The notes beneath the pieces are model-generated. The model did not search any database, was not told the origin of the DNA, and saw nothing but the letters and a program-made list of their open reading frames with translations. Positions 2,437-56,841 of a stretch of 64,000 nucleotides of DNA are shown here, in pieces. The DNA is from Octopus sinensis (Eukaryota), in NCBI RefSeq assembly GCF_006345805.1, contig NC_043001.1:118234001-118298000 (forward strand), given 5' to 3'. Every line of letters starts with the position of its first letter. Position 1 is the stretch's first letter. A program made the translations under genes and the position numbers.

Positions 2437-2618
2437 ACACACACACACACACACACACGCACATGCACAGGGTGACATAAACAAAAAATAAACAAGTGTC
2501 AACACACACACACACACACACATACACACACATACACATATACACACACACACACACATACACACACACATACACACACATACACACACACATACACACA
2601 CATACACACACACATACA

Positions 2619-2657
<39 letters not shown>

Positions 2658-2894
2658 ACACACACACATACACACACATACACACACACATACACACACA
2701 CACACATACACACACATACACACACACACACCATACACACACATACACACACACACACACATACACACCACACACACACACACATACACAACACACACAT
2801 ACACACACATACACACACACACACACTACACACACACACACACACATACACACACACATACACACACACACACATACACACACATACACACACA

Positions 2895-2933
<39 letters not shown>

Positions 2934-3277
2934 ACATACACACACATACACATATACACACACACACACACACATACACACACATACACACACATACACA
3001 CACACATACACACACATACACACACACACACACATACACACACACACACACACATACACAACACACACACACACACACACATACACACACATACACACAC
3101 ACACACACAACACATACACACACATACCACACACACACACATACACACACATACACACACACACACACATACACACACACACACCACACACATACACACA
3201 CACACATACACACACATACACACACACACACACATACACACACACACACACACATACACACACACATACACACAACA

Positions 3278-3349
<72 letters not shown>
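2437..3349. repeat. About 0.9-kb compound (CA)n/(CATA) microsatellite
   Basis: Read directly; explains the HT/CV-repeat ORFs in the track. Confidence 0.97.
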
Positions 3350-3350
<1 letters not shown>

Positions 3351-4715
3351 CACTATTATTTTGTTCAATATTGTGGTGGTTTTTTTCATTAGATGTTTCT
3401 TCACGTGTTTTTATGTTATTAAATTTTATGAGATAGAATGGTTAAAGAGAACAGATGGGGAATTATGATATTGATTAGAATGAACCATCGTATTTGTTTG
3501 GGAAATGTTATTGAGCTCACAGCTGATTAAGTGAATGGCTATGGACTACTTGTAACAATTCAGTGGTTTTATATCCTGTCACTAGTATTTTTCTTTTATT
3601 TATCTCTTTACTGAGGAGCTGAGTGCATCAATGACCCTTTACAGGGCCTCTGAGACATGTGCGAGGGATGGAAAGAGAAAAGTATCCCCAGATTAGAGAT
3701 CTGGCCCAAATGCTCACAGAGGTACACAAAGTGCCTGGTAGAGGTATTAACCAGCAATGGATTGATTAAATCTACCGCCCAAGTAGGTCATACTGGAATT
3801 TGAACTCAGAACACGAAGAGTTAAAGCAAATACTGCAAGACATCTGTTCTAATGCTCTAATGTTTGTGCCAGTCTGCCACCTTAGACTGGTGCATTATTT
3901 ATTGACTTTGGAAGAATGAAAGGCAAAGTTGACCCTGGTATGATTTGAACTCAGAACACAACATGCCAAAACCAATACTGAAATCATTTCATCAGATGTT
4001 ATAATGACTTTGCACATTTACCAGATTTGCTGAATGTCTATGTTGATAAAAATGCTTAAATTCTAATGAACCAACCGCATATCTACATATTAGGAAGAAT
4101 TGCAACATTTGAGTGTTTTGTAGCTTGTGGTTCTGAGTTCAAATTCTGTTAAGAATGTGAGCCATAATGTAGATGACAGCTTGCTTCAATAAATGTAAAC
4201 TAATATAGGATTCACTACCCAGTCACTTACTCTGTTAGAAATAACAGCTAGATATCCCTCAAAACTTTATTATAATAAAAAGAAAAAGACATGGTCATGG
4301 TTGGAATGCCTTCAATCAGATACACTGGAGCTAAACAACAGCAGCAACTGCCATCACCACCACCACTACTTCAAAATATAAACAAGTTTAATAAAACAAC
4401 AAGTAAATTCTTGTAGTGCCACTTCATATAAATGCAAGCCAGTCTACATGGCCATTTGATCTGATAAGAATAGCAGTGAAATTTCTCTCATGACACATCC
4501 TATGTAAAAGGAGTCCAACACATTCTACAACTATCACACGCAAACAAGTATGACTTGGTTACATGTAGCATACTTTTGTGTCTTGAGTGCCCATGTAGCC
4601 ATTTGTAGAGCAAACATAGACAGACTATTGACCCTCTTACTCTTGACCAAACAGATTATCCATGATTATAACTGCAGTAGGCTACACCAGCACTGGGTTG
4701 GTACTTTATTTATTG

Positions 4716-4933: not shown

Positions 4934-5229
4934 GGTACTTTATTTATTGACCCTGAAAGGAGGGAAAGCATAGAGGACATCAGCAGGGTTTGAACTCAGA
5001 GTGCAGAGAGTTGGAACAAATATTACTATGCATTCTATCTGACACTCTAACAACTCTGCCAACCAGTTGTTTTTATTCTAGATATAGAATACCTGGAAAA
5101 TAACACAAAATGATCATCAATGGCTTTCATCATAGAAATAGTTGAACAACAACTGATTTATTGAATTAGAATAACTTTTATTTTATTTTTTTTTATCAGT
5201 CTATGATGGCAGTTTCTTTATTCTTATAT

Positions 5230-9289: not shown

Positions 9290-10700
9290 TGATGAAGAGT
9301 TAAAGTATGCAAGAAGGGTCAATACCAGAGCATGTTTTGTAGAAAAGCTGTATGGTTAACATGTACCCCACAACATAGACTGGTAGTTAGCGACTTCAGG
9401 ATCAGGGCTAAATAGATGCCCAGAAGACAACCATCATGGAAGAGAAGGGTCAGGAAGCTTAAAGATCCTGTGAATGGACAGAGATTTAGAGACACATTAC
9501 TCGAAGCCTTTGAAGAAATAGAAGGAGATATAGCTGCACATGATATGGAAGACAACTGGAGGTTTCTACGGGACAACCGGCTGAGGGCAACTGACCAGAT
9601 CTGTGGATGGTGCAAAGTCCCCACTCAACCCAAAATAACGTGGTGGTGGAACAATGCTGCTGACAAGGCTATTAGAGCAAAGAAACATTATAAGATGTAC
9701 CCAGTGTAAGCTATGGTCACATAAGAGGTAAAGCAATATCAAAGGAAGGCTAACTGGGAAGATAGATTTTGTATGTGGCAGATGCTCAGGAGCAATAAAC
9801 ACTGAAAATGTGCAGAGAACAACTTCCGCCACATTCCAGGGAGAAAAACTAGAAGTAGTTGATAGCTTCTGTTACCTAGGTGACCAAGTCAGTAGCAGGG
9901 GGTTGATGCACTGAAAGTGTAGCTGCTAGAATAAGAATAGCCTGGGCAAAGTTCAGAGAGCTCTTACCTCTGCTAGTGACAAAGGGCCTTTCATTCAGAG
10001 TAAAATGTAGACTGTATGATGCATGTGTACGAACAGCCATGCTACATGGCAGTGAAACATGGGCTGTGACTGCTGAGGAAATGCTTAAGCTTGCAAGGAA
10101 TGAAGTATGCTCCGATGGATGTGTAATGTCAGTGTGCATACTTCACAGAGTGTTAGTGCCTTGAGAGAAAGGTTGGACCTAAAAAGCATCAGATGTGGTG
10201 TGCAAGAGAGATGACTGCGCTGGTATGATCATGTGGTGAGAATGGATGAGGATAGCTATATGAAAAAGTGCCACACCCTAGTGGTTGAGGGAACCTGTGG
10301 AAGAGGTAGACCCAGAAAGACTTGGGATGAGGTAGTGAAGCACAAACTTTGAACATTATGCCTCACCAAGGCAATGACTAATGACCAAGACCTTTGGAAA
10401 TATGCTGTGCTTGAGAAGACCCGGCAAGCCAAGTGAGACCATAACCCGTGCTCTATGCCAGGGGTGTAACCAGTCCACTTATGCGTACCTTTCCTTCATT
10501 GGACACTAAACTCTGCTTGCAAAGACCTGTTGAGGCAAGTGAAATCGAAATTAAATTCAATGACTGGTATCCGTGCTAGTGGAGCACTAAGAGCACCATC
10601 CGAGTGTGATCACTGCCAGAGTGGCTAACTGGCGTCCGTAAGAACCATTCAAGCATGATTGTTACCAGCGTTGCCTTACTGGTACTTGTGTGCAGGTGAC
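9290..10700 (+). mobile_element. RTE-clade LINE copy with the RT domain internally deleted
   Basis: EN-RT linker (RRQPSWKRRVRKLKDP...WWWNN) is joined at about 9690 to the post-RT region; 9810-10520 is colinear with about 930-1660 of the first RTE copy. Confidence 0.88.
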
Positions 10701-28113: not shown

Positions 28114-28846
28114 GCTCTAATGGGTATTAGTGCAGCAGCTGTCTTACTCTAGAACTAGGTTTATTTGAAGATGGACAAACTTGCCTCGTCACAAGCTCAT
28201 TGTTGGGAATCAGTCGTGTCCCCTGCAGACTCCTCTCATGCTGCTGCTGCTGCTCTGTAATTGCTTGTTTGGCTGAACCTTATTTACAGCAAACCTCCAT
28301 TATTTGAAGGCCACTCCACTATTCATTACCTGTGGATGTGCCATGTAAATATACATGCATGAGTGTGTGTGTGTGAATGCATGTGTGTGTGTGATGATGA
28401 TGATGATTGTAGCAGCTTTGCTGTTTCCAGCATGAAACCTCACAGGTTGCAAGTAAACTTTGCAAAACAGCACATATTGCCCACAATGCGTTGAGTACTT
28501 GTTTTGATTTGCAAACATCATAGCTCCACCAATAAACATACTCATACTACTATACATACATATACACATACGTGCATATAGGCATACATAAATAGATTTT
28601 CTTTTATTCTTTTATTTGTTTTAGTCAATTTGACTGTGGCACCACCTCGAAGGGTTTTGGGTTCATCAAATCTGATGCTTATTTTATCAATCACTTTTTT
28701 GCATGCATATACACAGATGCACACAGACACACACATACACACGATGGGTTTCCACACAGTTTCCATCAACCAAATTCACTTACACCTGGGGCTAGTTGAA
28801 AGATGCAGTAGTTACAAGGGTTTTTACCTACAAGTAAATTCATATA

Positions 28847-28888
<42 letters not shown>

Positions 28889-29586
28889 GAGAGTGATTAA
28901 CAGAAAAAAGTAAATTGAAAATAAAATTGTTATTTATGAGATATATTTTTCAATCTTTATCGAGATCAGTGATTGTGCATCACTTAAAGAATATATAGTA
29001 TTGGCCAGCTGGAAAAGATGTTTTCCTGGGACCAAACCAACAGTAACATTGTCCTTTATAGGACTGTCACATTCTGTTGGCATATAAACTTTACTATTTG
29101 GTACTGTTACTGTATCACTCAGTGATTTAAAACAAATTGTTTTTCTCTATAAGAGATCACTGTCTGTGCGTTACTTAAAGAATATATAGCATTTGCAAGT
29201 GGAGAGCTTTTGTTGCTAGCTTGTGGTTTTCTCACACCAAGGACGAGTAACCACTCAGAAACCTAGGTCTGTGAGTATCACGTAATGCAAGAGATAGGAG
29301 TGATGACCTCCCTTGCAAATGCTATACGGACACAGACTGTTGATAGCCTGCTGTAAAAGATGTTTTTCTGGGGCTAAAACAACAGTAACATCATCCTTCA
29401 TAGGACTGCCACATTCTGTTGGCATATAAACTTTACTATTCAATTTTTATCCTTTTCACTAAAATAATTGGATTTTTTGTTTTGTTTTTTTGTGGGTTAT
29501 TTTACATGTATAGACTAGAACGAACCAGCCTTAACTTCCTCCATCCCTTCATTTACAAATACTAATGTGAAATTATATACATAAAT

Positions 29587-29960
29587 AGGCGCTGGCGTGG
29601 CCCTGTAGTGAAAAGCTTGCTTCCCAGCCAATTTGTTCTGAGTTCAATCCCACTGCATGGCACCTTGGGCAAGTGTTTTCTACTATAGTATTGAGCCGAC
29701 CAAAGTTTTGTGAGTGGATTTGGTAGACGGAAACTGAAAGAAGCCCATCGTATATATGTATGTGTATCTATCTTGGTCATCTCCCACCACTACTTGACAA
29801 CCAGTGCTGGTGTGTTTACGTCCCCAAGTGAATGATAGAATAAGTACCAGGCTTCGAAAAAGTAAGTACTGGGTTAGATACATTCGACTAAAATTTCTTC
29901 AAGGCGATGCTCCAGCATGGCCGCAATCTAATGACTAAAACAAGTAAAATATAAAAGATA
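29587..29960 (+). mobile_element. CORE-type SINE
   Basis: Same head, core and tail as 33078-33474, more diverged. Confidence 0.85.
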
Positions 29961-30015: not shown

Positions 30016-30374
30016 TTCTTTTACTTTTACTTGTTTCAGTCATTTGACTGCGACCATGCTGGAGCACCGCCTTTCGTCTTATTCTTTGTAAGCCTAGTAC
30101 TTATTCTATCGGTCTCTTTTTGCCGAATCGCTAAGTTACGGGACGTAAACACACCAGCATCGGTTGTCAGGCGATGTTGGAGGGACAAACACACATATAT
30201 ATATATATATATATATCCGACGGGCTTCTTTCAGTTTCCGTCAACCAAATCCACTCACAAGGTATTGGTCAGCCCGGGGCTATAGTAAAAGACACTTGCC
30301 CAAGGTGCCACGCAGTGGGACTGAACCCATGACCATGTGGTTGGTAAGCAAGCTACTTACCACACAGCCACTCC
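30016..30374 (-). mobile_element. CORE-type SINE, tail-to-tail with the previous copy
   Basis: Reverse complement of the same family. Further diverged copies near 33520-33670, 52500-52670, 56020-56170, 57885-58020 and 58780-58920. Confidence 0.85.
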
Positions 30375-30522
30375 ATGTAATTTCTTTATCGAATAGTTGT
30401 TTAACCCCATTTCAACCGAAATCGAACAGACAGACGATCAATAGTGCTACAGCCGTCTCCATTTCTCATTTGAAATATACTTACAGCATTACATTGTTAA
30501 ATGCATTCTTCATATTGTGGAT

Positions 30523-32313: not shown

Positions 32314-33077
32314 CCTATTTATTATATGACTTTATTCAAAGGAGGAAGAGAAGCATTTTTAGGCCCCTTGAGGCTTATCAAATGGAATTATCTTCACACT
32401 GGTAATCAGACCTGAATGCTTGGAACAGAGTTACCTTTGCTTAAGATCCTCAAGGGCCTGGCAGTGGTGGTGTTAAACTAGGCACTCCATCATGAAGCAC
32501 CCCAGACAACATGAGTTGCAAGGTACCTTCAGCCAGCCCTGAAATACTGGAAACTGAAGTAACAATTTAAGTAACTTGATTCTGTTAAAAGATCTGTCTC
32601 AATATATCTCAAATTAATATAATCAATAAACCACTAAACTTAATTACTGAGGGAATATTATCCACAGTTAAGTTAAAATTGATTTCAAATTTTGGCAGAT
32701 GGCCAAAAGTTTGGCAAGGGGGGGGGGTTTAAGTCAATTAAATTGATCTCAGCGTTTATCTGGTACTTATTTTATCCACTCCAAAAGGATGAAAGGCAAA
32801 GTTGATCCCAGCAAAATTTGAACTTAGAACAAAAACACAAATGACATACTGCTAAGTATTTTGCCCAGCATGCTAACAATTCTGCCAACTCACCTCCTTC
32901 ATTTAAGTGAATATTAACATATTTAATGTAGTGAGATTAAAAAACGATAATTGGAAATATATGTAGAAATGATTAAAATAACGAGTCATTGAACTACTTA
33001 ATGTTGTCTTTTCCTCACCATATAACAATTATCTAATTACATTTTCTGATATTCATTAGTTTTTTTTAGTATTGAAT

Positions 33078-33474
33078 GGGCGCAGGAGTGGCTGTGTGGT
33101 AAGTAGCTTGCTTACCAACCACATGGTTCCGGGTTCAGTCCCACTGCGTGGCACCTTGGGCAAGTGTCTTCTACTATAGCCTCGGGCTGACCAAAGCCTT
33201 GTGAGTGGATTTGGTAGACAGAAACTGAAAGAAGCCTGTCGTATATATGTATATATATGCATGTGTATGTTTGTGTGTCTGTGTTTGTCCCCCTAGCATT
33301 GCTTGACAACTGATGCTGGTGTGTTTATGTCCCCGTTACTTAGCGGTTCGGCAAAAGAGACCGATAGAATAAGTACTGGGCTTACAAAAGAATAAGTCCC
33401 GGGGTCGAGTTGCTCAATTAAAGGCGGTGCTCCAGCATGGCCGCAGTCAAATGACTGAAACAAGTAAAAGAGTA
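33078..33474 (+). mobile_element. tRNA-derived CORE-type SINE, full length
   Basis: tRNA-like head (A box gtggctgtgtgg, B box gggttcagtccc), CORE-like ggcaccttgggcaagtg, tail ggtgctccagcatggccgcagtcaaatgactgaaacaagtaaaagag. Confidence 0.88.
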
Positions 33475-33699
33475 ATTGTGAAGCCTACCAAGAAATGCTA
33501 GTTATACATACAACAGGCTTCAACACAGTTTCTCTTTTATCTTATTTCACTCGAAAGATATTGATCAACCCAAAGCTATGGTAGAAGATATATGGTCAAA
33601 ATGATATGCAGTGGGACTGAACTTGAAACCACAGGGCTGTGAAACAAATTTCTTAGCCACACAGTCTATTGTCATTGATAATGTAACTGAAGCTACAAA

Positions 33700-36600: not shown

Positions 36601-37529
36601 CTTATTATTTCATTACTGTCACACTGGCCCATTGGAACTTGTAACCAAAGGTGCTTTTATTGTTCAAAATTTGCCATATAAAATAGAAATAAATTAGAGT
36701 TAAAACAGTCAAGCAGCTCAACCAAACTGTTAATTAATCAAGATGAAATCTAAGCATTTTCTAATGATGAAGCACTGACGATAAACAGACATTATACACT
36801 GCCAGACTCTCTCCATCAACAACAAAAAAAACCCCATCAGTGTTAATAGACATAATATTGTTTACTTAAAAAATAATAAATTATTTCGACAGTTAATAAA
36901 TAATTATTTATTTGAGTTTGCTACATTACTTCTTTTGTACAGGAAAAACACAAATTTTAAAGAAGGTTTTTAAATTTCATTAATGCATGTATTTGAACAT
37001 ATAATTCTTTGGACCATTGCTGTAAAATATTATGATGATAAATGTAGAGAACAAAACAAAACATCTTGGAAGAAGATCTAGCAAGGAAAATCTAATACAT
37101 TTTCACTTGCTGGATATAATTAGCTTACTTCACTCATCTCTAATGACATTTAGAATGGTATAAATACCACACTCACTATAATTTTCATTTCTTCTCAGTG
37201 AAGTTAGGACCTAGTGCCTATCTAAGAAACTGATATTATTCAACAGGCACTGGGATAAAACCAGTTATCTGCAACAAAGAGGTAAGCTCCAAGCAAACCA
37301 TGTTTAATCCCAGGTTATATCCTATCACACAATCTTACTTTCCATCCTAAAAAAAACAAACAAAAAAACAAAAACAATTTGGACTAAAACCCAAAGCAAA
37401 ATGAAATACTTTAAATGGTAGATAACAAATAACAAAAAGTTTTGACCTAAAAATTATTTATTTAAAGATTGGATTGGGATCAGATAGGGGAATTTTCAGA
37501 AGTCAAAATGGGGCATTTGACTGAGAGTG
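33700..37529 (-). other. Putative long 3' UTR / 3' flank of the POLDIP3-like gene
   Basis: AT-rich stretch after the stop codon that nearly lacks young SINEs and microsatellites; minus-strand AATAAA/ATTAAA hexamers at about 36656, 36045, 35217 and 34618. True end not determinable. Confidence 0.35.
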
Positions 37530-37764
37530 TCAAATTTTCACAGTAAAAGTCACAGGTCGACTGCCTGCTTGAGTAGAGGCTGCAGTACTGCTGCTACCAG
37601 CATTTGAACCTTTGTTGCTAAATAGTGCTTTATGAATTAGATTCACATCAACTACAGCAGTTGATGAAGTAGAAGAACTCTGTGAGGTTGTTCCACCACG
37701 GGTTGATGTACCACTATCCAGTTTAGGATTGGCACCAGAACTACTGTTTAAATCTTTCCGGAAC
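37530..37764 (-). CDS. POLDIP3: POLDIP3-like last coding exon (FRKDL...VDVNLIHKALF...RPVTFTVKI-stop)
   Basis: Acceptor ttgattgcag|G; 235 nt; stop TGA at 37530-37532. VDVNLIHKALF and RPVTFTVKI* resemble the conserved POLDIP3 C-terminus. Confidence 0.9.
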
Positions 37765-39055
37765 CTGCAATCAAAACAGGTGTGTCAGTTAAAAGAGAGA
37801 ACAATAAAACAAGAACAATTCTTTTATTTAACATTTGCACAACATTCATAAAATGCATTCTCAGTTTTTGTCAAAGTTTCTACAAAGACCGATTTATAAA
37901 GGTTACTGATGAACCAATGAGTTATTTCTATTTTTCTGCTGTTTTTATCCTTTTCACAGCCGAACTGTTTCACACATAAAAAATGTTGTTTCAGTACACA
38001 CACAATAAAACTTAAATGATAAATGCAAAAATAGCTGTCAAACTGTGTTAAATTAACTTATGTAACTTTGCATGGAAAGTGTTAAAAGTTCGCATGAATG
38101 AAAATTATCTTGATTATATTGGTATAGCAAACTTGAAAAATAAATCAAAAAAAAAAAAAAAAACATGTACTTATTAATTTTAGATATTGTAATCCCCTTT
38201 TCAAAAAAAAATTATTGCAGATAAAAAAGAATAAAAGCTAGATAGAGGAGTGGCGGAATAGATATGAAAAAAATAAATAAATAAAAAGAGTTACGTGTCA
38301 TTAGATCTCCAGTATTCACTTTTAGATCTCTTTATAATTAGGAGAGAAGGAAGTGTTGTGATGGAAAGGAGGAAGAAATCCTCAATCTGACACCTGGCCT
38401 CAATGCTTGCTATGGACTAAACTCTGCTAAAGGAATGCAAGGAGCCAGGTGATGAATTAAGTCCACCACCTAGGTAGGTCAAGGCAGGATTTAAATTTTG
38501 AATGCAAAGAACTGGAACAAATCCTGCAAGGTATGTGGCACAACAATCATACACTTGTATATATCTACTGTACTTTATTTTGAGCACAAAAAGACAAAAG
38601 GTAAAATTGGTTTCAATGGGATTTCAATTCAGGGAGTTGAAACAAATAGCATGAGACATTCCATCTGATGCTTGACAACTCTGCCAATTCACTGCCAACA
38701 AAGAATTATATGGTATTTATTCTTGTAGTTGGGTAATCCTGAAATGATCTGGTTTAGAAGCTCAGTCGCTGTGAAGTACTTTGATGTTTAAACATCAACA
38801 TGCTGTGATAATGATCATTAATTAATTACATCAGAGAAGCACTCAACATTTGGTTAGCATTATACAAATGCATCTTCAATTTGTGATGTTTATTGACCTC
38901 AACCCTAAACAATTTTATTGTATTATACCTTTTAATCTTATGACTCCCAGCTTAAAAGAACCAACAACTGACAGAATTGTTAGACCTTGTCATTAATATA
39001 GCATCGTAAACTAGACTATGTAACTCAATAAAGGAATCACAAACGGAATACATAC

Positions 39056-42100: not shown

Positions 42101-42163
42101 CACACACACCACAAAGAGAAATAATAGAGCTAGATTTGAAAGAAAACAAGAAAGGAAGCCTAC

Positions 42164-42293
42164 CATCAAGTTCTCTGTTGTGGTATTTATTGACAGCAGC
42201 TACAGCATCATTATATGATAAATAAACAACTTCTGCACAACCAGCTTTCAATAGATGGGCCTTTTTTAGGGCTCCAACTGCACCAAACAACTC
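42164..42293 (-). CDS. POLDIP3: POLDIP3-like exon, RRM core (ELFGAVGALKKAHLLKAGCAEVVYLSYNDAVAAVNKYHNRELD-G)
   Basis: Acceptor tttcttttag|GAG, donor GATG|gtaggc; 130 nt, phase 0/1. Resembles the vertebrate POLDIP3 RRM pattern ELF..GALK.A.L..PG.AEVV......A..A..KY.NR.LDG. Confidence 0.93.
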
Positions 42294-42416
42294 CTAAAAG
42301 AAAAAAAAAAGAAACCCAAATCATTCAACAGATATTATTTCAAGTATATGAATAATGAAAAGAATTTATGATTTAGGCACAAAGCCAGTAATTTTACCTA
42401 ATTCAGACTACTTTAA

Positions 42417-42635: not shown

Positions 42636-43770
42636 TTAAACCATAAACCAAGTTTTCTAATATAAAATGAGTTATTTTTTGCTGATGGAATATTGTAAAT
42701 AAAATATATATATATATATATAAAAACTCTGCAAAACAATATACAATGAGTAAAAGAAAGAGATGCTATATACCAGCTGATGTTTTTCTTTTACAGATTT
42801 CAAATACTAAAAGTCATTGTTCTGATGACAAGACAATGAAAATATGCTAATACCACTATAAACGGATATGATTTGGAATGTTGTTAAGCCTTAATGTCTT
42901 ACATACAAGCTGATATCTATGAACATAGATAAGGTAGCAGGAGGCCATAAATGTCTAGTAGCAATAGGGAAGCGGGTTTTGCAAGGCATCCTTGACAAGT
43001 AAAGGAACAAACCTGATACTGGGTCAAACAATGTCTAACCCTACATGCCAAACAGCGACAGTTTTGGTAAAAAAAGAATATGACTTTTGGTGCAGTAGAT
43101 GTACTGGAATACTTAGCAATAGAAGTAGCCATGAAATGAAGGCTAGAGAGTGACCAGGTGGGTCACTGGAAAAACAAACAAGTTCTGATATCAATGTTTG
43201 TTTAATTTGCTCTAGAGAAAGGTTGAATGACAGTTTAAAAAATACATAAACTTGGTAATGTAGAAATATATAAAATACAAATTAATAATAACAGGTTTTA
43301 TGCAATAGAAAATACTGAATGGACTATATCTTTTTTTTTTTTTTTTAATTTGCCATTAATTACTGACTGGTAAAAAAAGAAGACAGTAACAGTAAAAAGA
43401 TTTCTACTTCAGTGTTGTAAAATGTTAGTTCTGGCTAACAAAAAAAATCCCAAAATATAATTTCATAAAATAGAAAGACAATCTGGGGAAGTCAGTACTT
43501 TTTTTACTCTATTGCAATGGAATACTAAATTAGCAAAAGTGTAAAGCAAGACAGGCTATGCATGTGTACATGCATAGATGTGCATGAGTGATCAATTTTC
43601 ATTCATTCTTTTTTTTAATACTTGCAGAGGTCAGACAGTTCTCCAATACAGTACCTTACTATTTGTCACCATCCTTGTCATATATTTATAAGTTTCAGTT
43701 TTTACCACTTGCCTCCTCCTCTTATATATTTTGTATATAGGTAGCAGGATTGCCAGTGAGGTGACTTTCC

Positions 43771-43945
43771 AAAGCCCGGTCGAGTAGGAGGGCGCCATGG
43801 CGAGCATGGAAGTAGCTCTCGGTGGTAGTAGTAAATATTCATATGAGATCTTCAAAGACTGAAGTGGAGAAGGGTTCTGTGCCAATGGCAGTCGAGCAGG
43901 GGTCAATCAGTCAGTCCTAAGAAGCTGGTGAAAGCTTCCATGAAC
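43771..43945 (+). pseudogene. Decayed 28S rRNA fragment, antisense within a POLDIP3 intron
   Basis: cgagtaggaggg, ggtggtagtagtaaatattc, aagactgaagtggagaagggttc and gtcagtcctaaga are colinear with conserved eukaryotic LSU sequence as I recall it (CGAGTAGGAGGG...GGTGGTAGTAGCAAATATTC...GAAGTGGAGAAGGGTTCC...GTCGGTCCTAAG), with a deletion of about 40 nt. Confidence 0.88.
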
Positions 43946-44495
43946 CCCCCCCCCTTGCACTTCAAGGTAGTGCTCCAGCATGGTTGCAGTCAGATGACTG
44001 AAACAAGTAAAAGAATGTACATACCCAATAAATTAAACCAACACATACACACACACACAGTGATATATCTGAATATGCACATATGAGGTGTCTGGTGAAT
44101 ATTGTGCTCATACAAACATACATGTGTATATGTCTATATATTAAACGAGTACACATATAGGTGGATCTGAGTTGGTGTATTCATAGATGGCATGAAGCTC
44201 TTGCTTTTAAAAGTTAGCTGCAATTACATAACAAATTACAAACTCAATTCACAAATTCATTTTGACACAATTACAAATTCACTTCAGATCTTTGAGGATG
44301 TCATACAGGACTCCAATTTCACTACTGATAAACCTGATAAAAGGAAGACTCAGCATCAACTGAGATAGGCTCACTTGCAGAGTGATCCAGTATTTCATCT
44401 TGCTATTTGTTTCTTAGTGATTCCATTTTCTCACTAAAATGAGGAAAACTAAATGGGGACAACATACTTGTTCTCCAGCTCAATTTGCGCAGATA

Positions 44496-44896
44496 CTCTT
44501 TTACTCGTTTCAGTCATTTGACTGCTGCCATGCTGGAGCACCGCCTTTAATTGAGCAACTCGACCCCGGGACTTATTCTTTTGTAAGCCCAGTACTTATT
44601 CTATCGGTCTCTTTTGCCGAACCACTAAGTAACGGGGACATAAACACACCAGCATCGGTTGTCAGGCGATGTTGGAGGGACAAGCACAGACACACAAACA
44701 TACACACATACATACATACATACATATATATATATATACGACGGGCTTCTTTCAGTTTCCGTCTACCAAATCCACTCACAAGGCTTTGGTCGGCCCGAGG
44801 CTATAGTAGAAGACACTTGCCCAAGGTGCCACGCAGTGGGACTGAATCCGGAACCATGTGGTTGGTAAGCAAGCTACTTACCACACAGCCACTCCT
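44496..44896 (-). mobile_element. CORE-type SINE, full length
   Basis: Reverse complement is nearly identical to 33078-33474. Confidence 0.88.
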
Positions 44897-46135
44897 GATA
44901 CTTTATTTTAGTTGAGAAATATGTTTATATATAAATGGCACTCCATTGATTATGACAAGTGTTCCAGTTGATCTGATCAACAGAACAACCTGCTCATGAA
45001 ATTAACACACAAGTGGCTGAGCACTCCACAAATGTACATACCCTTAATGTAGTTCTCAGGGAGATTCAGTACAACACAGGTGACAAGGCTGACCCTTTGA
45101 ATTAGAGGTACAACTCGTTTTTGCCAGCTGAGTGGACTGGAGCAATGTGAAGTAAAGAGTCTTGCTCAAGGACACAAATTGATACCAGGAATCAAACTCA
45201 CAACCTCGTGAGCCAAATACCCTAACTACTAAGTCATGCATTTTCTCTCTCTCTCTCACACACGCATGCATGCACACACACACACGCATGTATGCACACA
45301 CATACACACACACACCTGCTTCTCGTTAGTTGATTACGATGAGTTTACATTACCAGCAATTTAAGCGAGGAGGGTTAACGTAGCAAGTGACTAATACCAA
45401 AGAGAACACTACTTCTGGAAAACAAACAGTGGCCTAGATAAACCAGGGATGGCATTACAAAACCTACATAATTAACTATTTTGTCACAAACTATGCAGAT
45501 TGTAATTTAGTTGTACCCCAATTTCTGAATGGTGAAAATAGGCATTAATTACCGACACCAGCCAATGACTATTTAGTAATCTATTTTATTTTCTCTTGCA
45601 TTCTTGACTAGGAGACCTCACTGCCACTTCTCAACTGGGCTTCACATGGGAAGCAATTATTAGATTTTCCTCACAACACACATTATGTACTTTTCTTCTA
45701 CCTAGAGTAAAGACTCTTGATTTATTAAGACTACACACCCACTCACATGTGTATATATGTGAACACACAGAGAAACACTCTTTCTTTGCACTTTGTTTGG
45801 CTAAAGGCGGTGCTCCAGCATGGCCGTAGTCAGATGACTGAAACAAGCAAAAGAATAAAAGAATAGCAATTGACTGCCTTCTTTAACCAACAGACAGGAG
45901 ATTATACTGCACAGTAATCAATAGAGTTATTGTTTACAAAACCTGCATGCTTGTTTGTATTATGTCAAATCATTTTAAAAGATGACCTTTATATATCTAT
46001 TCAATACAGAATACACCTATGTTTGAAGATAAGCTTAACTGAAAGTAAACAATATCATGATCAAGGCCACATCAAAACAACATTTAAAAACATTTGAACA
46101 ATATCAAGCAGTTAGTAACAGATGGCATGCTAAGA

Positions 46136-48383: not shown

Positions 48384-51100
48384 TACAAATACTTGTAAGA
48401 AACAGGTATAAATATTAAGAATTCTGATTTGAAGATGGAGCAAGGTTCCAATCAGGTGTAGAATGATATTGTAGATAAAGTCATAAAGCTAAGAGATAAA
48501 TAAAAAAAGAAAGAAAATAAATGGATAGCAAGGAATACTATCAGACAACTTGGCTTGCTAATTTTCCATATAGAAGGGACCAAAAGCAGAGGTATTCTGA
48601 ATTATGAAACTGTACCAGTGTGAATCAGAATATTGTTGTCAAAAACTTTGTATATTTTGTGTAATTACCCTTGCCAAGACTGGGGCATGAATGCTATTAA
48701 TAGTTGTTGAAAAAAAGGGAATACAGTAGACTCCTCTGAAAAGACTCAAAAGTGGGACCAGCTGTTGAGGCAGCCAACTATACAGTTGGAAGAGCCATTA
48801 TGAATATGATAACAGTGAAAGCAGAACTACCAGGGATAGTTGATGCTGAAAATACCTAGTGAATTAAGGGATACACCAGTTATTCACATAGCTAAACAGG
48901 TAGTATAGGGTGTCATTCCCAAAGACTGACATATTAGCAGCATGGTGAAGAGTTCAAAGGAGATTCTTTAGACAGGAGCAATTACAGGGATATGAAATTG
49001 ATGAACCAAGACATGAAAGTGGCAGAGAGAATTAGAGGAGGCAAAGTTTGGTTTTGTGCACTGCTCTATTTTTAGCAAGGAAGCTAGAGAGAAATCTTAC
49101 CCAAGAGTGCACTACTGTACCTAGTATTCATTTATTTTATACATGTTAAATAAAAAGGAAACTAAGATATTTCTCCATGTTGCTGCACTCATCTGCTACT
49201 TAGTTTGTAACCCAAATATACAATCATCAGCAAATTCCCACGACAGAAAAAAATCAGGCTAAACAAATAAGATACAACAATCTATTTCTGGATTGTACTA
49301 AATATCACAGGACAGAATAATGGCATTATAATCTCAGACCCAGTTCTGCAGTCATTCTCAAGACACTGATTATGCCTATGCCGTTTTAAGATTGTACAAG
49401 TAGAGTTGATAGAGACTAAACAATAACTGCATCATGATAGCTTATAATAATTTATTAAGAAATAACTACATGAAGAAGTATTTAATAAGTATTTGACAAC
49501 TCCATAAACATATATTGACACTGCTTACTTAATAAAGAAACCAAGGTAAAATAAGTTTACAACTAACAATATTTTTTACTACTGTGCCACAATTTTTTAT
49601 AGAATGAAGAACTGTTTAATCTACACCTATTTTCTATCTAAAGAAGAGTCATGAAATTTGAATGGGTACTTTAATTCTATGTCTATGTGAAGAATTATCA
49701 ACAGAAAAACTCCATAAGTTTCTAGCAGTCAAGTGTAGAGTTTTAAGATTTCCAGCAGCTCCCAAAATTTATGCAAATACTGAAATAAAATCGTCATCCA
49801 TTCTAGCAAGACAACAGATGGTAGTAAAATACTCATTACAATTATTAATCAACCTTTATTAAATTGAAATGTATGAGCATTTGGAATCATTGCCCATCAA
49901 AGAGAACAAGTAACTCCAAAGAGGAACTCAGGCCATGACAAATCATCCAATCTAAGCTGATATGAAAAGCAAATGTAAAATTATGACTGATGAAATAAAG
50001 TATATGAAATAAAATTGATATGGAATATGTTTCATCTTTTTTAGCTACAACTCCTCATTCCAGAATATGAAGGAACAACAGTACAACAAAAGCAGGTACA
50101 CTGCAATGGGTGCAGCATGATTGTATGGTTAAGCAGTTCACTTCACAATCACACAAGTCCAGGTACACTCTCACTGCATAGCACATGGTGAAAATGATCT
50201 TCTACAATAACCCCAGGATGAACAATAAACCTGTAAGTGGAATTTGGGAGTTAGAAACTATGTAGAAGCTCTATTTCAACTACTGTGAAACTATTTGAAA
50301 AAAGAATGTTGCAGTAATGAAAAAGACAAATGACAAAGATGAAAAATTCACCATGAGCTTTGCTCTGCTCTTTCTATGATGCACACCTTGTGCAGTCATA
50401 TGCTTCATGCAAATATTGAACTTCTTAGTCACCAGATGAAGCAACATAAGAAATATGTGAGAGAAGAAAGAATACTACTTGGAAATAAAAAAAATTGGTG
50501 ATATTATGTGTGTGAATGTGTATATTCTACCAATGCATATCAGTAAAGTGGGTAAACATCACTGAGAAAGACAAAAGAATGATTCTCTTTGAATGAAATT
50601 TTTTGTGATATTTGTTCTGCCCTGAATTTAGAAACTTCCATGTGTCACTTTTACAGTCAAAAATGCAGTGAACTAGAGACTAGTTGAACAGAAACTGAAA
50701 ATGTGATATAAATACTGCAAAAGGTAAGCATGCTCAGGTCATTGCTACAGGAAGGGAGATAATAACGGTTAACCCCTACAACTAGCGTTAAAAATTTATA
50801 AGACTCAATTTGTGGAATTTATCACCATTACATCACATATAAACACTAATTTACGCTAGTATATACATACAATTAAAAGTACTTTTAAAATAAGCTTTTG
50901 AGGTCCCACTCTCTTTCCAGAAGAAAATTAAAGACATTAGACACAATTCTCAGTAATATGAAAATATCACTATTCCCACATTCATCACAGCTAAAGTTAA
51001 ACTATTAGAATTTGTTCATATTTATTCTTCTTTGAGCTATTAGGATTTTGTACGGTTGTAACATTTTTCTTCTAGAGTGAAATAAAATGCTTTGACTTAC

Positions 51101-51196
51101 AATTATATCATCTTGAGTGACAATTGGATGAAGATTAGTGACCAACACACGGTAGCCAGATGAAGATGAAGAATTGGAGAGAATGTCAGAAGAAAA
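51101..51196 (-). CDS. POLDIP3: POLDIP3-like exon, start of RRM (FSSDILSNSSSSSGYRVLVTNLHPIVTQDDII)
   Basis: Acceptor tttgtttcag|TTT, donor ATT|gtaagt; 96 nt, phase 0/0. RNP2-like VLVTNL plus HPIVTQDDI matches the POLDIP3 RRM as I recall it. Confidence 0.92.
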
Positions 51197-51844
51197 CTGA
51201 AACAAATCAAATCAAGAAATTTATGAACAAAAACATATTTAGATAAAGAAGAGTTCCTTTCTAAATGTATCTGAGACATTAAAGAGATTTATCTATCAAA
51301 ACCATTTACTGTGAAAAAAAAACCCCATTACTATCTGGTTTAAATGGTTCCTGTATATTGTACATGACTGCTGTAGGAAATATGTAAACAAAGGCTACCA
51401 AAATGAGCATGCAGTGAAGAACAGAGCACAACAGAATAATTGCTGAAAACAAGTAAACAAAAAATGTGGTACACACAAAAAAAGAAAAAAGTTTGCTTCA
51501 AGCTTAATTTTCATGGTAATTAAATGGATGACATTACAAGACTTGCTGCCAAAGAGGACAGCAGCTTGTTGCAAGGCCAATCCCAATCCAGCTAACTATT
51601 GCTGGTATGTGTTTTCAGCTGCATAGATTGTAATGAAATGCTTTCCTCAAAAACACAACATCCTGCTCCATAAATATAAAATTCAAAAGTTCTTGATACT
51701 GTCAAAATGATGAATCTATATGTATGGGAGTATTCACAAATACTTATGTATTTATATAAATTTGGTTGAAAAAACAGGAGAAATTTAAGTGAATATTTTA
51801 ATGTCTACTATTCCAAGCTTGCATAGGTCAGAATTCACTTTGGC

Positions 51845-52385
51845 AGACCTTCTCCAGTTTCCTGCCCCTCAAGTCACCAACCTGTCAGACTTTCTCCAGT
51901 TTCCTGCCCTTCAAGTCACCAACCTGTCAGACTTTCTCCAGTTTCCTGCCCTTCAAGTCACCAACCTGTCAGACTTTCTCCAGTTTCCTGCCCTTCAAGT
52001 CACCAACCTGTCAGACTTTCTCCAGTTTCCTGCCCTTCAAGTCACCAACCTGTCAGACTTTCTCCAGTTTCCTGCCCTTCAAGTCACCAACCTGTCAGAC
52101 TTTCTCCAGTTTCCTGCCCTTCAAGTCACCAACCTGTCAGACTTTCTCAGTTTCCTGCCCTTCAAGTCACCACCTGTCAGACTTTCTCCAGTTCTGCCCT
52201 TCAAGTCACCAACCTGTCAGACTTTCTCCAGTTTTCTGCCCTTCAAGTCACCAACCTGTCAGACTTTCTCCAGTTTCCTGCCCTTCAAGTCACCAACCTG
52301 TCTGACTTTCTCCAGTTTCCTGCCCTTCAAGTCACCAACCTGTCAGACTTTCTCCAGTTTCCTGCCCCTCAAGTCACCAACCTGT
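51845..52385. repeat. 42-bp minisatellite, about 13 copies
   Basis: Unit agactttctccagtttcctgcccttcaagtcaccaacctgtc; units 2-7 identical, later units carry small indels. Confidence 0.97.
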
Positions 52386-54186
52386 TTGTTTCCAAACAAG
52401 CTAATATTTCTCCGTCACATGACATCTATGGATGACTAGAAAGAACATCATTTGGATGACAGAGGCATTTGTTTAACTATCGTGGGATGCCAAGACAATA
52501 ACATACACAACTAGCAACTTTCTGTTTCCATCTACCAAAAGCACCTGCAAGATTTTGGTTGATCTGAGGCTGCTGTAGAAGACACTTGTCCAAGGTGCCA
52601 TGTACCAGGACACAACCTAAAATCATATGGTTAAGAAGCAAACACCTCAACCACATAGTCATACCTGTATACACACACACACACACTATATATATATATA
52701 CATTTCCTATCCATGCAAACATGGAAGATGGATGTTAATGATTTTAAAACAATGACTGGAAAATTTGGTAATTTTTCATTCCTCGTTGTTTCATTATAGG
52801 AAATACAGTATGAATAATAATAATCTTTTCTGCTATAGGCACAAGGCCTGGAATTTTGGGGGAGAGGACCAGTCGTTACATCAACCCCAGTGCATAATTG
52901 GTACTTAATTTATTGACCTGAAAAGGATGAAAAGCAAAGTCAACCCCAGCGGCATTTGATAATGATAATTTTACAATAGTTATTTATATACATGTAGAGG
53001 ATCTATTGTAACTCTTCAGACAAAAATTATATTTCAATCTCACAGGAGACTTAGCGGTTGATCAAAAACAAGATGCATGGATAGTATCCAATCCAACCAA
53101 AAAGTGTAATGATGGTTACTTCTGATAATGACCCTATGAAGAAGGTGCCTGGGGACAATACCCCAACAACCCTCCCAGGAATAATGGACAAAGAAAATGC
53201 ATGGATGGACAATGGGTAGAAATCATGTTACCGTTTTACAGAGTTTATTAACATGACAGGATATATTATAGTCACGAGGAATATTTTTTAAAAATATGTC
53301 AAAAACTGTAGTTCCAAGAAAGTACAATTCATCTCAAATTACAATGCCAATCTATTTTCATCATTTGACATGTAATATGGAGTTGGAATACTTGGTCTGC
53401 TAGTTTCTCACTTAGAATCATACTCTACTGAAACACTAGACTAATTGGTCCTAGATAAGGAACTCAAATTTGAGAATGGATTTCAATGTTCCTGTGGAGA
53501 ATTTGTGGGCAATAGATACCATATAACTTGGAGATGTTATCTGTAATAAATCAGTGTCTTAACTAGGAGATATTCAACTCACATCAGTTTAACCCATAAT
53601 AAAACTGGAGTTAACAACCATTGCTTAAAAATTATATGAGGTTTAATTTTTTTTCATGGCTTAGTCGGGAGTCCATGATCTCTGAAGAGCTGTTGAGACT
53701 GGGCAGAATTGAAAAGAACTAGTTACAGATTGTTGCAGTAGGTAGCATTGCAAATCAAGTTATCTATCCTCAGGACCAGGTGATGATGTTGAAATGGTGC
53801 ATCAAATTAGGTCTAAGACTTACGTATGTATAAACAAAAGAACAATCCAAGCATGGAAAAGAAGTTTGGTTACTTGCCAACTAGAGTTCAAACTCTAACC
53901 TAGTAAACTACCATGACTTGTCTCTTTGTTAATTTAGGTGTAAATAGATTGTGACTATAATTACTAATTTCTTGGTTCAATGGCTGGGGTTAGGAAGAGC
54001 ATTGAACAGTGGAAAATGTGTTTCAATATTTACTTAATTTGGAAAAAAAGAACCCCAAAAAACTAACAAAGAAAACCTTTAAACCTTTCTAGCACTGACA
54101 AATTGTAAAATAAAATAGTGATCATTACTGTTTTGACATTAACTTGTACTCATGAAGATGTCGAATTCAAAAACAGAATTACTCAC

Positions 54187-54630
54187 CTGGTCATGTGAAT
54201 CAACATTACTTGCAGGTTTCATACGTTTCGTAGCAGATGGAACAACCCCAAAATCTCTGGACTGACGAGGAAATTTGATAAGACTTTCCCGATCTAATGG
54301 TAAGGAAGATTTCGATGGATTGCTAGCAACTTCGTATTTGTCTCTACTACGAGTCATTGATGAAGAAGAAAGTACAGAATTCTGGCTGAGCCGTAATGAC
54401 CATGGAGATGAGGATGATGACTGTTGTGGAGGTGGTGGTGGTGGGGATGAGGGTGAAGTAAGGTGTCGAGCAGAAGAAGTGAGAGAAGAGTACCCAGAGG
54501 TACTCAAATGTTCGTAATCATAGTCTATGGATTTAGGAGTAGGGATTTTCTCCCGATAATGATCATTCTTCAATTGTATAACAGGACCTCTGAGGGGCTC
54601 ATAAGTTGCGATATTTGATCTTTCATCACT
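54187..54630 (-). CDS. POLDIP3: POLDIP3-like exon, Ser/Pro-rich low-complexity region (148 aa, SDERSN...DSHDQ)
   Basis: Inside ORF 54139..54684; acceptor ttgtttcag|AGT, donor CAG|gtgagt; 444 nt, phase 0/0. Confidence 0.85.
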
Positions 54631-56841
54631 CTGAAACAATTGAAAAAAAGTTAAGTTAGAAACTGAAAAAATAAAATGATACAAATATGTATATTAAACT
54701 TCTCACAAATTGTATTTCAGCAGGCACCTAGCAGCATTTGACAAATCCATTAGATTTAAACATATGTGAGAAATCAGTTGCAGAGTGTTAGAGAAAACTG
54801 TGTGGTGTGGTTATGTGACGTGCATGGAAAATGTTAGCTATGTAAAGCAGTTCAATGTGGATGGAAACATAGGAATAAGAAGTAGTGATGACTGATCTCA
54901 AGAAGTTGAACCTCACAAAGAGGATTGGTCAAAGGCTGCAACAAGTGGAGAAATGTTGTGCTTAAGAAAATCGAAGTCCATGAAAACATAGAAAAATAAA
55001 TGTAAAAGAAATGCTGGTGGTCAAAGAGGGTGGGATAATATCTACAATTCATGCTAATATTTCCATACACGACCCCCATCTTAATTACTATACATCATTC
55101 TCTCATCATTCCTTTTCTGCAGCTAGTACCTTCCTACTGTCTCTTCTATCATATTCTCTTCCTCTGTCACCATCTCACTTGTCTCTTTTCAATCCAACCA
55201 ACAACCTCCATGCAATGTCTATCTCTATCCCTTTCCATTACCCTCTTCTCTATCATTCTGGTTCCCTTTTTAGACTCCCTCTTTCTGCCATCACACTGCC
55301 TATGTCATGGGAGATAGCAATGCATGCATACCTGCCAATTCATCCTTTGTTACCTGGCTAATTTATCAGCACATCTCACCTCAACAACCTATTCCGACTA
55401 CATGGGTCCAAAAGCTGATCTAAGTCTCCCCAACTCTCTTAGCACGAAGACCTTACCTGGTGCCATGGAGACAGCATCAGCTTGCCACTGACAACCAACT
55501 GTCTTTTTGCTATTAAAAATACAAAATGGACTGATGCAGAGGAGGCAGCAATGGGGACAATAACCTGTTCATTTGCTGTTACACTTCAAGAAGGGCCCTT
55601 GCCTGATGAACTGGGTACAATCAACACATAGTTTACATCAACTTTCCCATGCCAGTAGGGGTTGGATAGATTTTTCTGAAGCAGTGCTTTATGTCCAGAT
55701 ACCCTTCCTATTGTCAAGCTTTTATTTCATAAAACATGCAGAGATTTAGTGCATCCCACTCTAAAACCGACCTACATATTGTTAGATACTGTATTTAAGA
55801 CATAATTCTGACTAACAACTTGAATTTTAATCAAGAATACTATTAAAGGAATAATACAACATGCATGCACACAGATGCAGTGAGGGGACTTAGAGAATAT
55901 CACATACAAACATTCTTTTTCTGGAAGTGTGTGAATATGTAAATTAATATCTATCAAGGAAAAAAAGTATTCTTAATTACCAATTGCTATTCATTATTTT
56001 GCCTTTTACTAAGTTGAAACATATAGAGGTGCAAGTATGGCTATGTTGCTACAGAGTCCAATTGGTTTCCATCCCACTGCATGGCACCTTGGGCAAATGT
56101 TTACACCAAAGCTTTGGCATGACAAATGCATTGTGGGTGAAACTGGTAGGTAGGAACAATATGGAACTCTGCCATACACATATTTCATTCATTTAATCTG
56201 TTTTTTATGCTAGAATGGCTTAGATTGGGATTAATTTTGAGGCAGGATTTCATAGCCAAATACTCTTCATATCTTCATTCCACCCTGTTTTCAGCAAGGG
56301 TTTTTAATATTCCACAAGTCTTCAAAACTAAGAGTAACCAATCACAGAAAGTAAACATCATTCTTCTCAACCCGAACAAGTGAATAGTAATGCTCACACA
56401 CAGGTATGTATGTATGTATGTATGTATGTGGTTGCACTGACAAAGGTTGGGTGACAGTCATGTTATGCATACAACTCCTGTAGCTTGACAATTTCAGTTT
56501 CAACATATGAAAACCAGTGGAATAGAAATACTTTACTTGAACAGAAATAGTTAGGAGTTGAGTGAGACTTCTTGAAATAGTATTCTAAGATTAATATGCC
56601 AGAAAGGGTATCTGCCTCAAGAAGTTTCACCAAAGTAATGGCAGCACAAAAAGAAAAGCTGATGTGAAAAACTCAGAAAATTGATATTCTAATTTTTTTT
56701 GTCATAAATGAAAAAAAAAAATAAAAGGTAGTAACACAGAAGGCAGCAATGGTAACAGTGGCAAAAGTATTGGAAAATATATTTGTTGTCATACAAGACA
56801 CATGCAGCTGAAAATTTTACACTATAGTTTTGAACATTTAC

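What the first reader, a model, noticed from the sequence alone, without database searches (positions are those of the whole stretch)
43771..44015. 28S rRNA fragment fused in the same orientation to a SINE 3' tail: candidate rRNA-headed retro-chimera
Seen: the 28S-like piece (43771-43945) is followed by a C10 run and then only the 3' tail of the local CORE-type SINE (cttcaaggtagtgctccagcatggttgcagtcagatgactgaaacaagtaaaaga, 43960-44015), with no SINE head. Known: LINE reverse transcriptases make template-switch chimeras (for example U6-L1), and rRNA-derived SINEs exist (5S-derived SINE3, 28S-derived SINE28). Inference: this is either a one-off chimera or a member of an undescribed cephalopod SINE family with an internal-28S head. 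I see no target-site duplication.
Basis: partly seen in the sequence, partly recalled or inferred. Interest (0 to 1): 0.7.

Follow-up and report, generated by a model that had tools for sequence, protein, structure and literature searches.

The report
28S rRNA piece fused to SINE tail
A decayed 170-base copy of large-subunit ribosomal RNA sits head-to-tail against the last ~57 bases of the local octopus SINE inside an intron; it is most likely a dead by-product of retrotransposition, of a kind already catalogued in primates, and whether it ever multiplied could not be tested.

Summary
Window 43774-43944 (+) is a true 28S rRNA fragment: Rfam LSU_rRNA_eukarya scores 67.6 bits, E 4e-16, when the region is scanned alone. 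It is followed by C10 (43945-43954), TTGCA, and the 3' tail of the local CORE-type tRNA-SINE (43960-44016). That tail occurs about 10 times in the window; the rRNA part occurs once.

Two results favour a single RNA-mediated event. First, both halves are equally decayed: 87% identity at conserved rRNA positions and 91% for the tail. Second, the rRNA piece ends inside the interval that holds the protostome "hidden break" (D7a). The junction therefore lies at the predicted natural 3' end of 28S-alpha, as expected for an end-to-end template jump or an RNA ligation.

I found no target-site duplication, but the local SINE copies show none either. There is no convincing pol III promoter.

One-off versus SINE family could not be tested. 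No Octopus genome was reachable, and control searches for the abundant SINE tail also found nothing. 28S/LINE-1 chimeras are already described in primates, so this is a new member of a known kind. Interest is modest.

The parts
43774..43944 (+). 28S (LSU) rRNA-derived segment. It corresponds to Rfam LSU model positions ~1371 to ~1575 and is interpreted as the 3'-terminal ~205 nt of 28S-alpha, minus a 35-nt hairpin tip.
   Evidence: 67.6 bits, E 4.2e-16; 76/87 identical at highly conserved positions, and 8 of 11 changes are transitions. Several helices are broken in the alignment, so it is a decaying pseudogene.
43800..43804 (+). Site of an internal deletion. Five nt (GCGAG) stand where the LSU model has 40 positions (1397-1436). 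The stem base CCATG/CATGG is retained.
   Evidence: alignment (*[40]* in the model against *[5]* in the sequence). The cause is inferred: either the reverse transcriptase skipped a hairpin or the bases were deleted later.
43863..43882 (+). Upstream marker of the protostome hidden-break region (AGUGGAGAAGGGUUCCAUGU), matched 17/20.
   Evidence: (Natsidis et al. 2019, PMC6925239) gives the marker. One search shows the match. The downstream marker CGAAAGGGAAUCGGGUUUAA is absent (best 11/20, chance level).
43945..43954 (+). C10 run at the junction. It sits where the 5' strand of the D7a hairpin would begin. Its origin is unresolved: templated by octopus D7a, or added without a template.
   Evidence: aligned to model 1575-1589 with posterior probability only ~0.5.
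43955..43959 (+). TTGCA, five bases that cannot be assigned to either parent.
43960..44016 (+). 3' tail shared by the local CORE-type tRNA-SINE and presumably its partner LINE. It includes the hairpin CAGTC-AGAT-GACTG (43987-44000) and the terminal AAAAGAAT.
   Evidence: 75-92% identity to nine other copies; alignment and predicted hairpins; 48/53 identical to the window consensus.
33075..33475 (+). Full-length reference copy of the SINE (tRNA-like head, CORE, microsatellite, tail). Shown for comparison only; not part of the chimera.
   Evidence: The copy at 44494-44908 (-) is 93-97% identical.
42162..42313 (-). Downstream exon of the host gene (second half of an RRM domain). Together with the exon at 51095-51227 (-), it bounds the intron that holds the chimera, which lies antisense to the gene.
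   Evidence: conserved with L001; translations; the nearest solved structures are ALY/REF-type RRMs.

Best explanation
This is a dead chimeric retrocopy made in one RNA-mediated event.

Proposed mechanism:
1. The reverse transcriptase of the LINE that mobilises the local CORE-type SINE primed on the SINE (or LINE) 3' tail at a nicked target.
2. It copied only the last ~57-80 nt of that RNA.
3. It then continued on the 3' end of 28S-alpha, the 5' half of the 28S rRNA that protostomes cut at the hidden break in D7a. This happened either by an end-to-end template jump or because the two RNAs had been ligated beforehand.
4. It copied about 205 nt of rRNA, losing a 35-nt hairpin tip, and stopped, as in ordinary 5' truncation.

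The insert lies antisense in an intron of an RRM (POLDIP3-like) gene. It has since decayed by about 10-13% and has no function. It is most likely solitary or very low in copy number.

Shown directly: the anatomy, the equal decay of the two halves, and the position of the junction relative to the published hidden-break markers.
Inferred: the RNA intermediate, which enzyme acted, jump versus ligation, and solitary status.
For: - A real 28S fragment in sense orientation directly abuts the retroposon tail.
- Both halves are equally diverged from their sources: 87% identity at conserved rRNA positions and 91% for the tail, Fisher p 0.78.
- rRNA homology stops 57-72 nt after hidden-break marker 1, and marker 2 is absent. 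The interval between the markers has a median of 105 nt in Mollusca. A random 3' end would fall in that interval only about 2-3% of the time.
- Reviews state that cephalopod and octopus 28S carries the protostome break, and a figure legend of a 2026 preprint depicts it.
- Tails occur about once per 6 kb in the window. Chance abutment within ~15 nt, on the same strand, at that particular rRNA position would therefore be very rare.
- 28S/LINE-1 chimeras with the same layout (sense orientation, 50-482 nt rRNA pieces) are documented in primates.
- There are no convincing pol III boxes.
- The element folds no better than shuffled sequence, z 0.29.
Against: - No target-site duplication was found. 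This is weak evidence, because the four full SINE copies checked show none either.
- No empty orthologous site could be examined. The only ortholog reached (L001) is a distant cephalopod with a 2.5-kb intron and no copy of this SINE.
- A 10-nt C run is longer than typical untemplated additions.
- If the window was drawn at random, finding a solitary chimera in 64 kb is itself improbable, which favours a multi-copy family.
Confidence: 0.55

Rival explanations
1. The element is one copy of an undescribed octopod SINE-like family. Its head derives from the 3' end of 28S-alpha and its tail from the same LINE that serves the CORE-SINE. The founding event would be the same chimera, followed by amplification.
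For: - The tail, the module the partner LINE needs, is intact, with its hairpin and terminal AAAAGAAT.
- At least two different SINE bodies in the window already share related tails, so new heads are recruited to this tail.
- rRNA-headed SINEs exist: SINE28 and the 5S-derived families listed.
- Base-rate argument (inference): meeting a solitary chimera in a random 64-kb window is unlikely.
Against: - The window holds no second copy, against about 10 tails.
- There is no A box, and the only B-like motif has 2 mismatches and lies 96 nt from the best A-like site.
- No fold signal.
- No ORF-level relatives in the protein collections. Those collections contain almost no Octopus DNA, so this is very weak evidence.
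Confidence: 0.28
2. Two independent insertions. An older 28S-derived fragment was already present, and a 5'-truncated SINE or LINE copy later landed next to it by chance.
For: - Tail-only copies occur elsewhere in the window (45785-45858).
- No TSD brackets the whole element.
Against: - It requires the same strand, a gap of 15 nt or less, and a landing point at the hidden-break end of the rRNA piece.
- The two halves are equally diverged.
- An rRNA fragment has no means of its own to be reverse-transcribed by a LINE that needs its specific tail (established knowledge of stringent-type LINEs).
Confidence: 0.1
3. DNA-level origin. A piece of rDNA (an orphon, or filler DNA captured at a double-strand break) was inserted without an RNA intermediate, and its adjacency to the tail is coincidental.
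For: Dispersed rDNA-derived pseudogene fragments are known in other genomes (Robicheau 2017; seen only as a reference title, the paper itself was not read).
Against: - A DNA fragment has no reason to end in the D7a hidden-break interval.
- It has no reason to be fused in sense orientation to a retroposon tail.
Confidence: 0.05

Closest known systems
[quoted passage not shown]
   Same: A 28S fragment of a few hundred nt (range 50-482, median 269) is fused in sense orientation (83% of cases) to the 5' side of a retroposon 3' part. They are attributed to template switching or RNA ligation during target-primed reverse transcription, and are rare, solitary events (n = 18).
   Different: - Here the 3' partner is the specific, non-poly(A) tail of a cephalopod CORE-SINE or its LINE, not L1.
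- The rRNA piece comes from a different region. In primates many pieces start near position 3636.
- The junction coincides with the protostome hidden break, which mammals lack.
- No TSD is seen.
U6 snRNA/LINE-1 chimeric retrogenes
   Same: A cellular RNA is joined through its natural 3' end, in sense orientation, to a 5'-truncated retroposon.
   Different: - U6 is copied full-length; here the rRNA is 5'-truncated after ~205 nt.
- U6/L1 chimeras have TSDs and poly(A).
- The role of a 2',3'-cyclic phosphate end in ligation is known for U6 (own knowledge: Moldovan et al. 2019) and is only conjectured here for 28S-alpha.
SINE28 (Longo et al. 2015, PMC4994717)
   Same: A 28S-derived sequence mobilised by LINE machinery.
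   Different: [quoted passage not shown]
- The present piece comes from the middle of the gene (the D7a border), carries a SINE/LINE-specific tail and shows no promoter.
5S-rRNA-derived SINEs (SINE3 and relatives)
   Same: An rRNA-derived head combined with a LINE-derived tail.
   Different: The 5S gene brings its own internal pol III promoter. A 28S fragment does not. Multi-copy status is not shown here.
OR2 / CORE-SINEs of Octopus (Ohshima and Okada 1994, cited in PMC4758252)
   Same: The tail at 43960-44016 matches that of the window's CORE-type tRNA-SINE copies, whose CORE resembles the MIR core.
   Different: Only the last ~57-80 nt are present; there is no tRNA head and no CORE. Identity of the local SINE with OR2 itself was not tested.

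Membership tests
Chimeric retrocopy (cellular RNA + retroposon 3' end, U6/L1 or 28S/L1 type) | The cellular-RNA part lies 5' of the retroposon 3' part, directly fused with it and in the same orientation | tested here: met
   28S 43774-43944 (+), then 15 nt, then tail 43960-44016 (+).
Chimeric retrocopy (cellular RNA + retroposon 3' end, U6/L1 or 28S/L1 type) | The junction uses a natural end of the cellular RNA | tested here: met
   rRNA homology stops 57-72 nt after hidden-break marker 1, and marker 2 is absent. The end position in octopus itself is inferred, not measured.
Chimeric retrocopy (cellular RNA + retroposon 3' end, U6/L1 or 28S/L1 type) | A single insertion event: both parts are the same age, and the empty site lacks both | tested here: inconclusive
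   Divergence is equal, 87% against 91%, p 0.78. No informative orthologous site was reachable.
Chimeric retrocopy (cellular RNA + retroposon 3' end, U6/L1 or 28S/L1 type) | A target-site duplication brackets the whole chimera | tested here: not met
   no direct repeat of 8 nt or more at the ends. The four full SINE copies checked also lack clear TSDs, so this feature may not apply to this LINE group.
SINE family with an rRNA-derived head (SINE28 / SINE3-like) | Many dispersed copies share the same head-tail junction | not testable with these tools
   One copy in 64 kb. Collections that could be scanned lack even the abundant SINE tail. Protein collections hold almost no Octopus DNA.
SINE family with an rRNA-derived head (SINE28 / SINE3-like) | An internal pol III promoter (A and B boxes) in the head | tested here: not met
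   no A box without a mismatch. The single B-like motif, GGTTCTGTGCC, has 2 mismatches and lies 96 nt from the best A-like site.
SINE family with an rRNA-derived head (SINE28 / SINE3-like) | A LINE-derived 3' tail able to recruit the partner reverse transcriptase | tested here: met
   The tail, with both predicted hairpins and the terminal AAAAGAAT, is retained. Function was not tested.
SINE28 specifically | [quoted passage not shown] | tested here: not met
   The piece maps to LSU model 1371-1575 of 3401.
CORE-SINE (OR2-like) copy | A tRNA-derived head and a CORE domain | tested here: not met
   No tRNA-like sequence and no homology to the head or CORE upstream of the tail.

The most novel reading that the evidence does not exclude
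The locus is one member of an undescribed octopod retroposon family. Its head is the 3' terminus of 28S-alpha, created by the hidden-break cleavage, and it is mobilised through the CORE-SINE/LINE tail. That would be the first SINE-like family headed by a large-subunit rRNA fragment outside mammals, and the first born from the protostome hidden break.
Probability: 0.28. Interest if true: 0.6.

Novelty: new member of a known kind. Interest (0 to 1): 0.33.

Why it matters
As a solitary chimera it is a small natural-history record. It would show that the reverse transcriptase behind a cephalopod's tail-specific LINE/SINE system can carry along abundant cellular RNA, as mammalian L1 does. It would also show that the hidden-break cleavage of protostome 28S rRNA supplies a free 3' end for this.

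The junction gives an indirect genomic record of where 28S-alpha ended in the octopus lineage when the insertion occurred.

If many copies exist, it would be a new class of rRNA-headed retroposon and a useful phylogenetic marker for octopods. No effect on the host gene is expected, because the insert is intronic, antisense and decayed.

Tried and rejected
1. I first thought the 5' end of the rRNA piece (43774) was the 5' end of 28S-beta. This was wrong. The published flanking 20-mers place the hidden break downstream of GAAGUGGAGAAGGGUUCC, so the 3' end of the piece is the one that coincides with the break.

2. I first estimated that the rRNA half was about 20% diverged, and so older than the tail. 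That figure counted variable positions. At highly conserved positions the identity is 87%, no different from the tail.

3. TTGCACTT is shared with the tail-only copy at 45785-45858. In the multiple alignment that string sits at a different homologous position in that copy, so the match is probably chance.

4. SINE homology might extend upstream through ATGAAC-CCC, which resembles the copy at 28600-28740. That stretch also aligns to 28S, so it is unresolved. The junction can only be placed between 43939 and 43960.

5. Searches for other copies all failed:
- junction-spanning ORF against the word-indexed protein collection and the representative library (one noise hit, E 3e-4);
- a chimera DNA pattern in metagenome and prokaryote genome collections;
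- control scans for the SINE tail alone were also empty, so these negatives say nothing;
- a SINE ORF search found only one 538-bp ENA contig (L003) and an Argonauta hians 'protein' that holds the CORE only;
- exact look-up of the antisense ORF found nothing.

6. The partner LINE was not found. The RT-bearing LINE fragments at 1-1675 and 9805-10546 do not end in this tail.

7. Structure: the whole-element fold is no better than shuffled sequence, and the tail hairpins show no compensatory changes.

Full report
**What is there**

A GC-richer stretch starts near 43771. It is followed by ten C's (43945-43954), TTGCA, and CTTCAAGGTAGTGCTCCAGCATGGTTGCAGTCAGATGACTGAAACAAGTAAAAGAAT (43960-44016).

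The rRNA match depends on how much sequence is scanned:
- Whole-window Rfam scans did not list it.
- An 801-nt scan gave LSU_rRNA_eukarya at 28.6 bits, E 8e-5.
- A scan of 43730-43960 alone gave 67.6 bits, above the curated threshold of 50, with E 4.2e-16 and model positions 1363-1589.

The difference arises because the match is a short piece truncated at both ends. Two checks do not depend on Infernal. The universal 20-mer GACTGAAGTGGAGAAGGGTT is present exactly once in the window. The published marker AGUGGAGAAGGGUUCCAUGU matches 17/20 at 43863-43882.

The confident alignment runs from 43774 to about 43939. It starts with GCCCGGTCGAGTAGGAGGG, the 3' strand of the hairpin that precedes GAGUAGG. 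One hairpin tip is missing: 5 nt stand at 43800-43804 where the model has 40 positions. There is also a 4-nt insertion.

**The tail**

BLAST of the region against the window found the rRNA part only once. The last ~55 nt occur nine more times, at 75-92% identity.

Full-length copies of the repeat lie at 33075-33475 (+), 44494-44908 (-), 29584-29955 (+) and 30024-30390 (-). They have a tRNA-like head, a CORE-like segment (CCTTGGGCAAGT...GCCTC), a TG/TA microsatellite and this tail. Octopus OR2 is a published CORE-SINE. I did not test whether the local SINE is OR2 itself.

Nothing upstream of 43958 in the focal element matches the head, CORE or body, and ARAGORN finds no tRNA-like sequence.

The tail carries two predicted hairpins, including CAGTC-AGAT-GACTG at 43987-44000, and ends in AAAAGAAT. 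In other copies that octamer is repeated. From general knowledge, this is the look of a tail recognised specifically by a CR1/L2-type LINE. The partner LINE itself was not found in the window.

**One event or two?**

At positions that Rfam marks as highly conserved, the rRNA piece is 76/87 (87%) identical, and 8 of the 11 changes are transitions. The tail is 48/53 (91%) identical to the consensus of the window's copies. The two proportions do not differ (Fisher p 0.78). Several rRNA helices are broken in the alignment, so the piece is a decaying pseudogene, not a variant rRNA.

Tails occur about once per 6 kb in the window. Chance abutment within 15 nt, on the same strand, would therefore be rare.

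**The junction**

Natsidis et al. (PMC6925239) define the protostome hidden-break region as the interval between AGUGGAGAAGGGUUCCAUGU and CGAAAGGGAAUCGGGUUUAA. The median interval in Mollusca is 105 nt, and it contains the D7a loop.
- The first marker is inside the focal piece. The second is absent (best match 11/20).
- rRNA homology fades 57 nt after marker 1.
- The C10 run sits where the 5' strand of the D7a hairpin would begin.
- The SINE tail starts 77 nt after marker 1.

So the rRNA piece ends inside the hidden-break interval, at the predicted 3' end of 28S-alpha. A randomly placed 3' end would fall there only about 2-3% of the time.

Reviews state that cephalopod and octopus 28S carries this break. 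A 2026 preprint on octopus ribosomes draws the protostome gap alongside a further octopus-specific break in H88.

I had first guessed that the 5' end of the piece was the 28S-beta 5' end. The marker sequences showed that this was wrong.

**Mechanism**

A free natural 3' end joined in sense orientation to the 5' side of a truncated retroposon is the signature of U6/L1-type chimeras. Two routes can produce it: an end-to-end template jump during target-primed reverse transcription, or ligation of the two RNAs before reverse transcription.

The same layout has been catalogued for 28S rRNA and L1 in primates: 18 loci, pieces of 50-482 nt, 83% in sense orientation.

Here the enzyme would be the LINE that serves the CORE-SINE. 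It copied ~57-80 nt of tail RNA, moved to 28S-alpha, copied ~205 nt and stopped. The hairpin tip was lost either during copying or later.

The C10 run may be templated by octopus D7a or added without a template. I could not tell which.

**Target-site duplication**

None was found. The four full SINE copies I checked show none either, so this neither supports nor refutes the model.

**One-off or family?**

This could not be tested.
- The junction-spanning ORF found nothing in either protein collection.
- The chimera pattern found nothing in the metagenome or prokaryote collections.
- Control scans for the very abundant SINE tail were also empty.
- A SINE-ORF search returned only a 538-bp ENA contig and an Argonauta hians entry that holds just the CORE.

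The collections therefore contain essentially no Octopus DNA.

Evidence from the sequence itself leans weakly against a self-sustaining SINE: there is no A box, only a 2-mismatch B-like motif, and no excess folding. Against that, meeting a solitary chimera in a random 64-kb window would be lucky. I put the family reading at about 0.28.

**Context**

The host gene is on the minus strand. Exons at about 54142-54693, 51095-51227, 42162-42313 and 37528-37784 are conserved with a distant cephalopod contig, L001. The two middle exons encode an RRM (GYRVLVTNLHPIVTQDDII / ELFGAVGALKKAHLLKAGCAEVVYLSYNDAVAAVNKYHNRELDGR). Its nearest solved relatives are ALY/REF RRMs.

The chimera lies antisense in the 8.8-kb intron that splits the RRM. 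In L001 that intron is 2.5 kb and has neither part, but that species also lacks the SINE, so it does not serve as an informative empty site.

**Verdict**

It is best read as a decayed 28S-alpha/SINE-tail chimeric retrocopy, a new member of a known kind. The useful added detail is that its junction marks the hidden break. Interest is modest unless genome-wide searches reveal a family.

Noticed in passing
window 29584-29955 (+) / 30024-30390 (-); 33075-33475 (+) / 44494-44908 (-): SINE copies form inverted pairs inside the same intronic region. One pair has 179-nt arms, 80% complementary and 425 nt apart. The other has 233-nt arms, 93% complementary and 11 kb apart. In the pre-mRNA these could form long double-stranded RNA, a possible substrate for the heavy A-to-I editing known in octopus.
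   Followed up: no
window 51844-52385: A very regular 42-nt tandem array: 13 copies, 97% matches, unit CAGACTTTCTCCAGTTTCCTGCCCTTCAAGTCACCAACCTGT. It lies in the intron just upstream (in gene direction) of the RRM exon at 51095-51227.
   Followed up: partly
window 1-1675 and 9805-10546: Two copies (81% identical) of a LINE fragment with a reverse-transcriptase remnant (Pfam RVT_1, E 1.5e-6, just below the cutoff). They do not end in the SINE tail, so this is not the partner LINE.
   Followed up: partly
window 2143-2421, with relatives at 3798-3983, 4934-5028 and 32762-32828: A second SINE-like family (...GATTTGAACTCAGAAC...). Its copy at 2143-2421 ends in a related but diverged tail (GCAGTCCAATGACAGAAACTAGTGAAACAAT), which suggests that several SINE bodies share one LINE tail lineage.
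   Followed up: partly
window 45785-45858: Another tail-only copy of ~70 nt with unrelated sequence upstream. It may be a 5'-truncated SINE/LINE copy or a second chimera with an unidentified partner. It has no Rfam match.
   Followed up: partly
window 2436-3350: A ~900-bp imperfect (CA)n/(CATA)n microsatellite. This and other TG/TA repeats produce all the sub-threshold miRNA-family Rfam hits (mir-297, mir-466, mir-3149 and others), which are artefacts.
   Followed up: yes
L002 10001-10300 (Argonauta hians GCA_054771915.1, BAAFZT010000006.1): The annotated 'hypothetical protein Ahia01_000201400, partial' is a translation of the CORE region of a SINE copy (87% identity to window SINE positions 55-167). 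It is probably an annotation artefact. It also shows that the CORE, but not this tail, is shared with Argonauta, at least in the 20 kb seen.
   Followed up: partly
L003 (ENA ERZ1023377, 538-bp contig): A metagenome assembly contig carries a 90%-identical copy of the octopus SINE including its tail, so it is host (Octopus-like) DNA within a metagenome sample.
   Followed up: no
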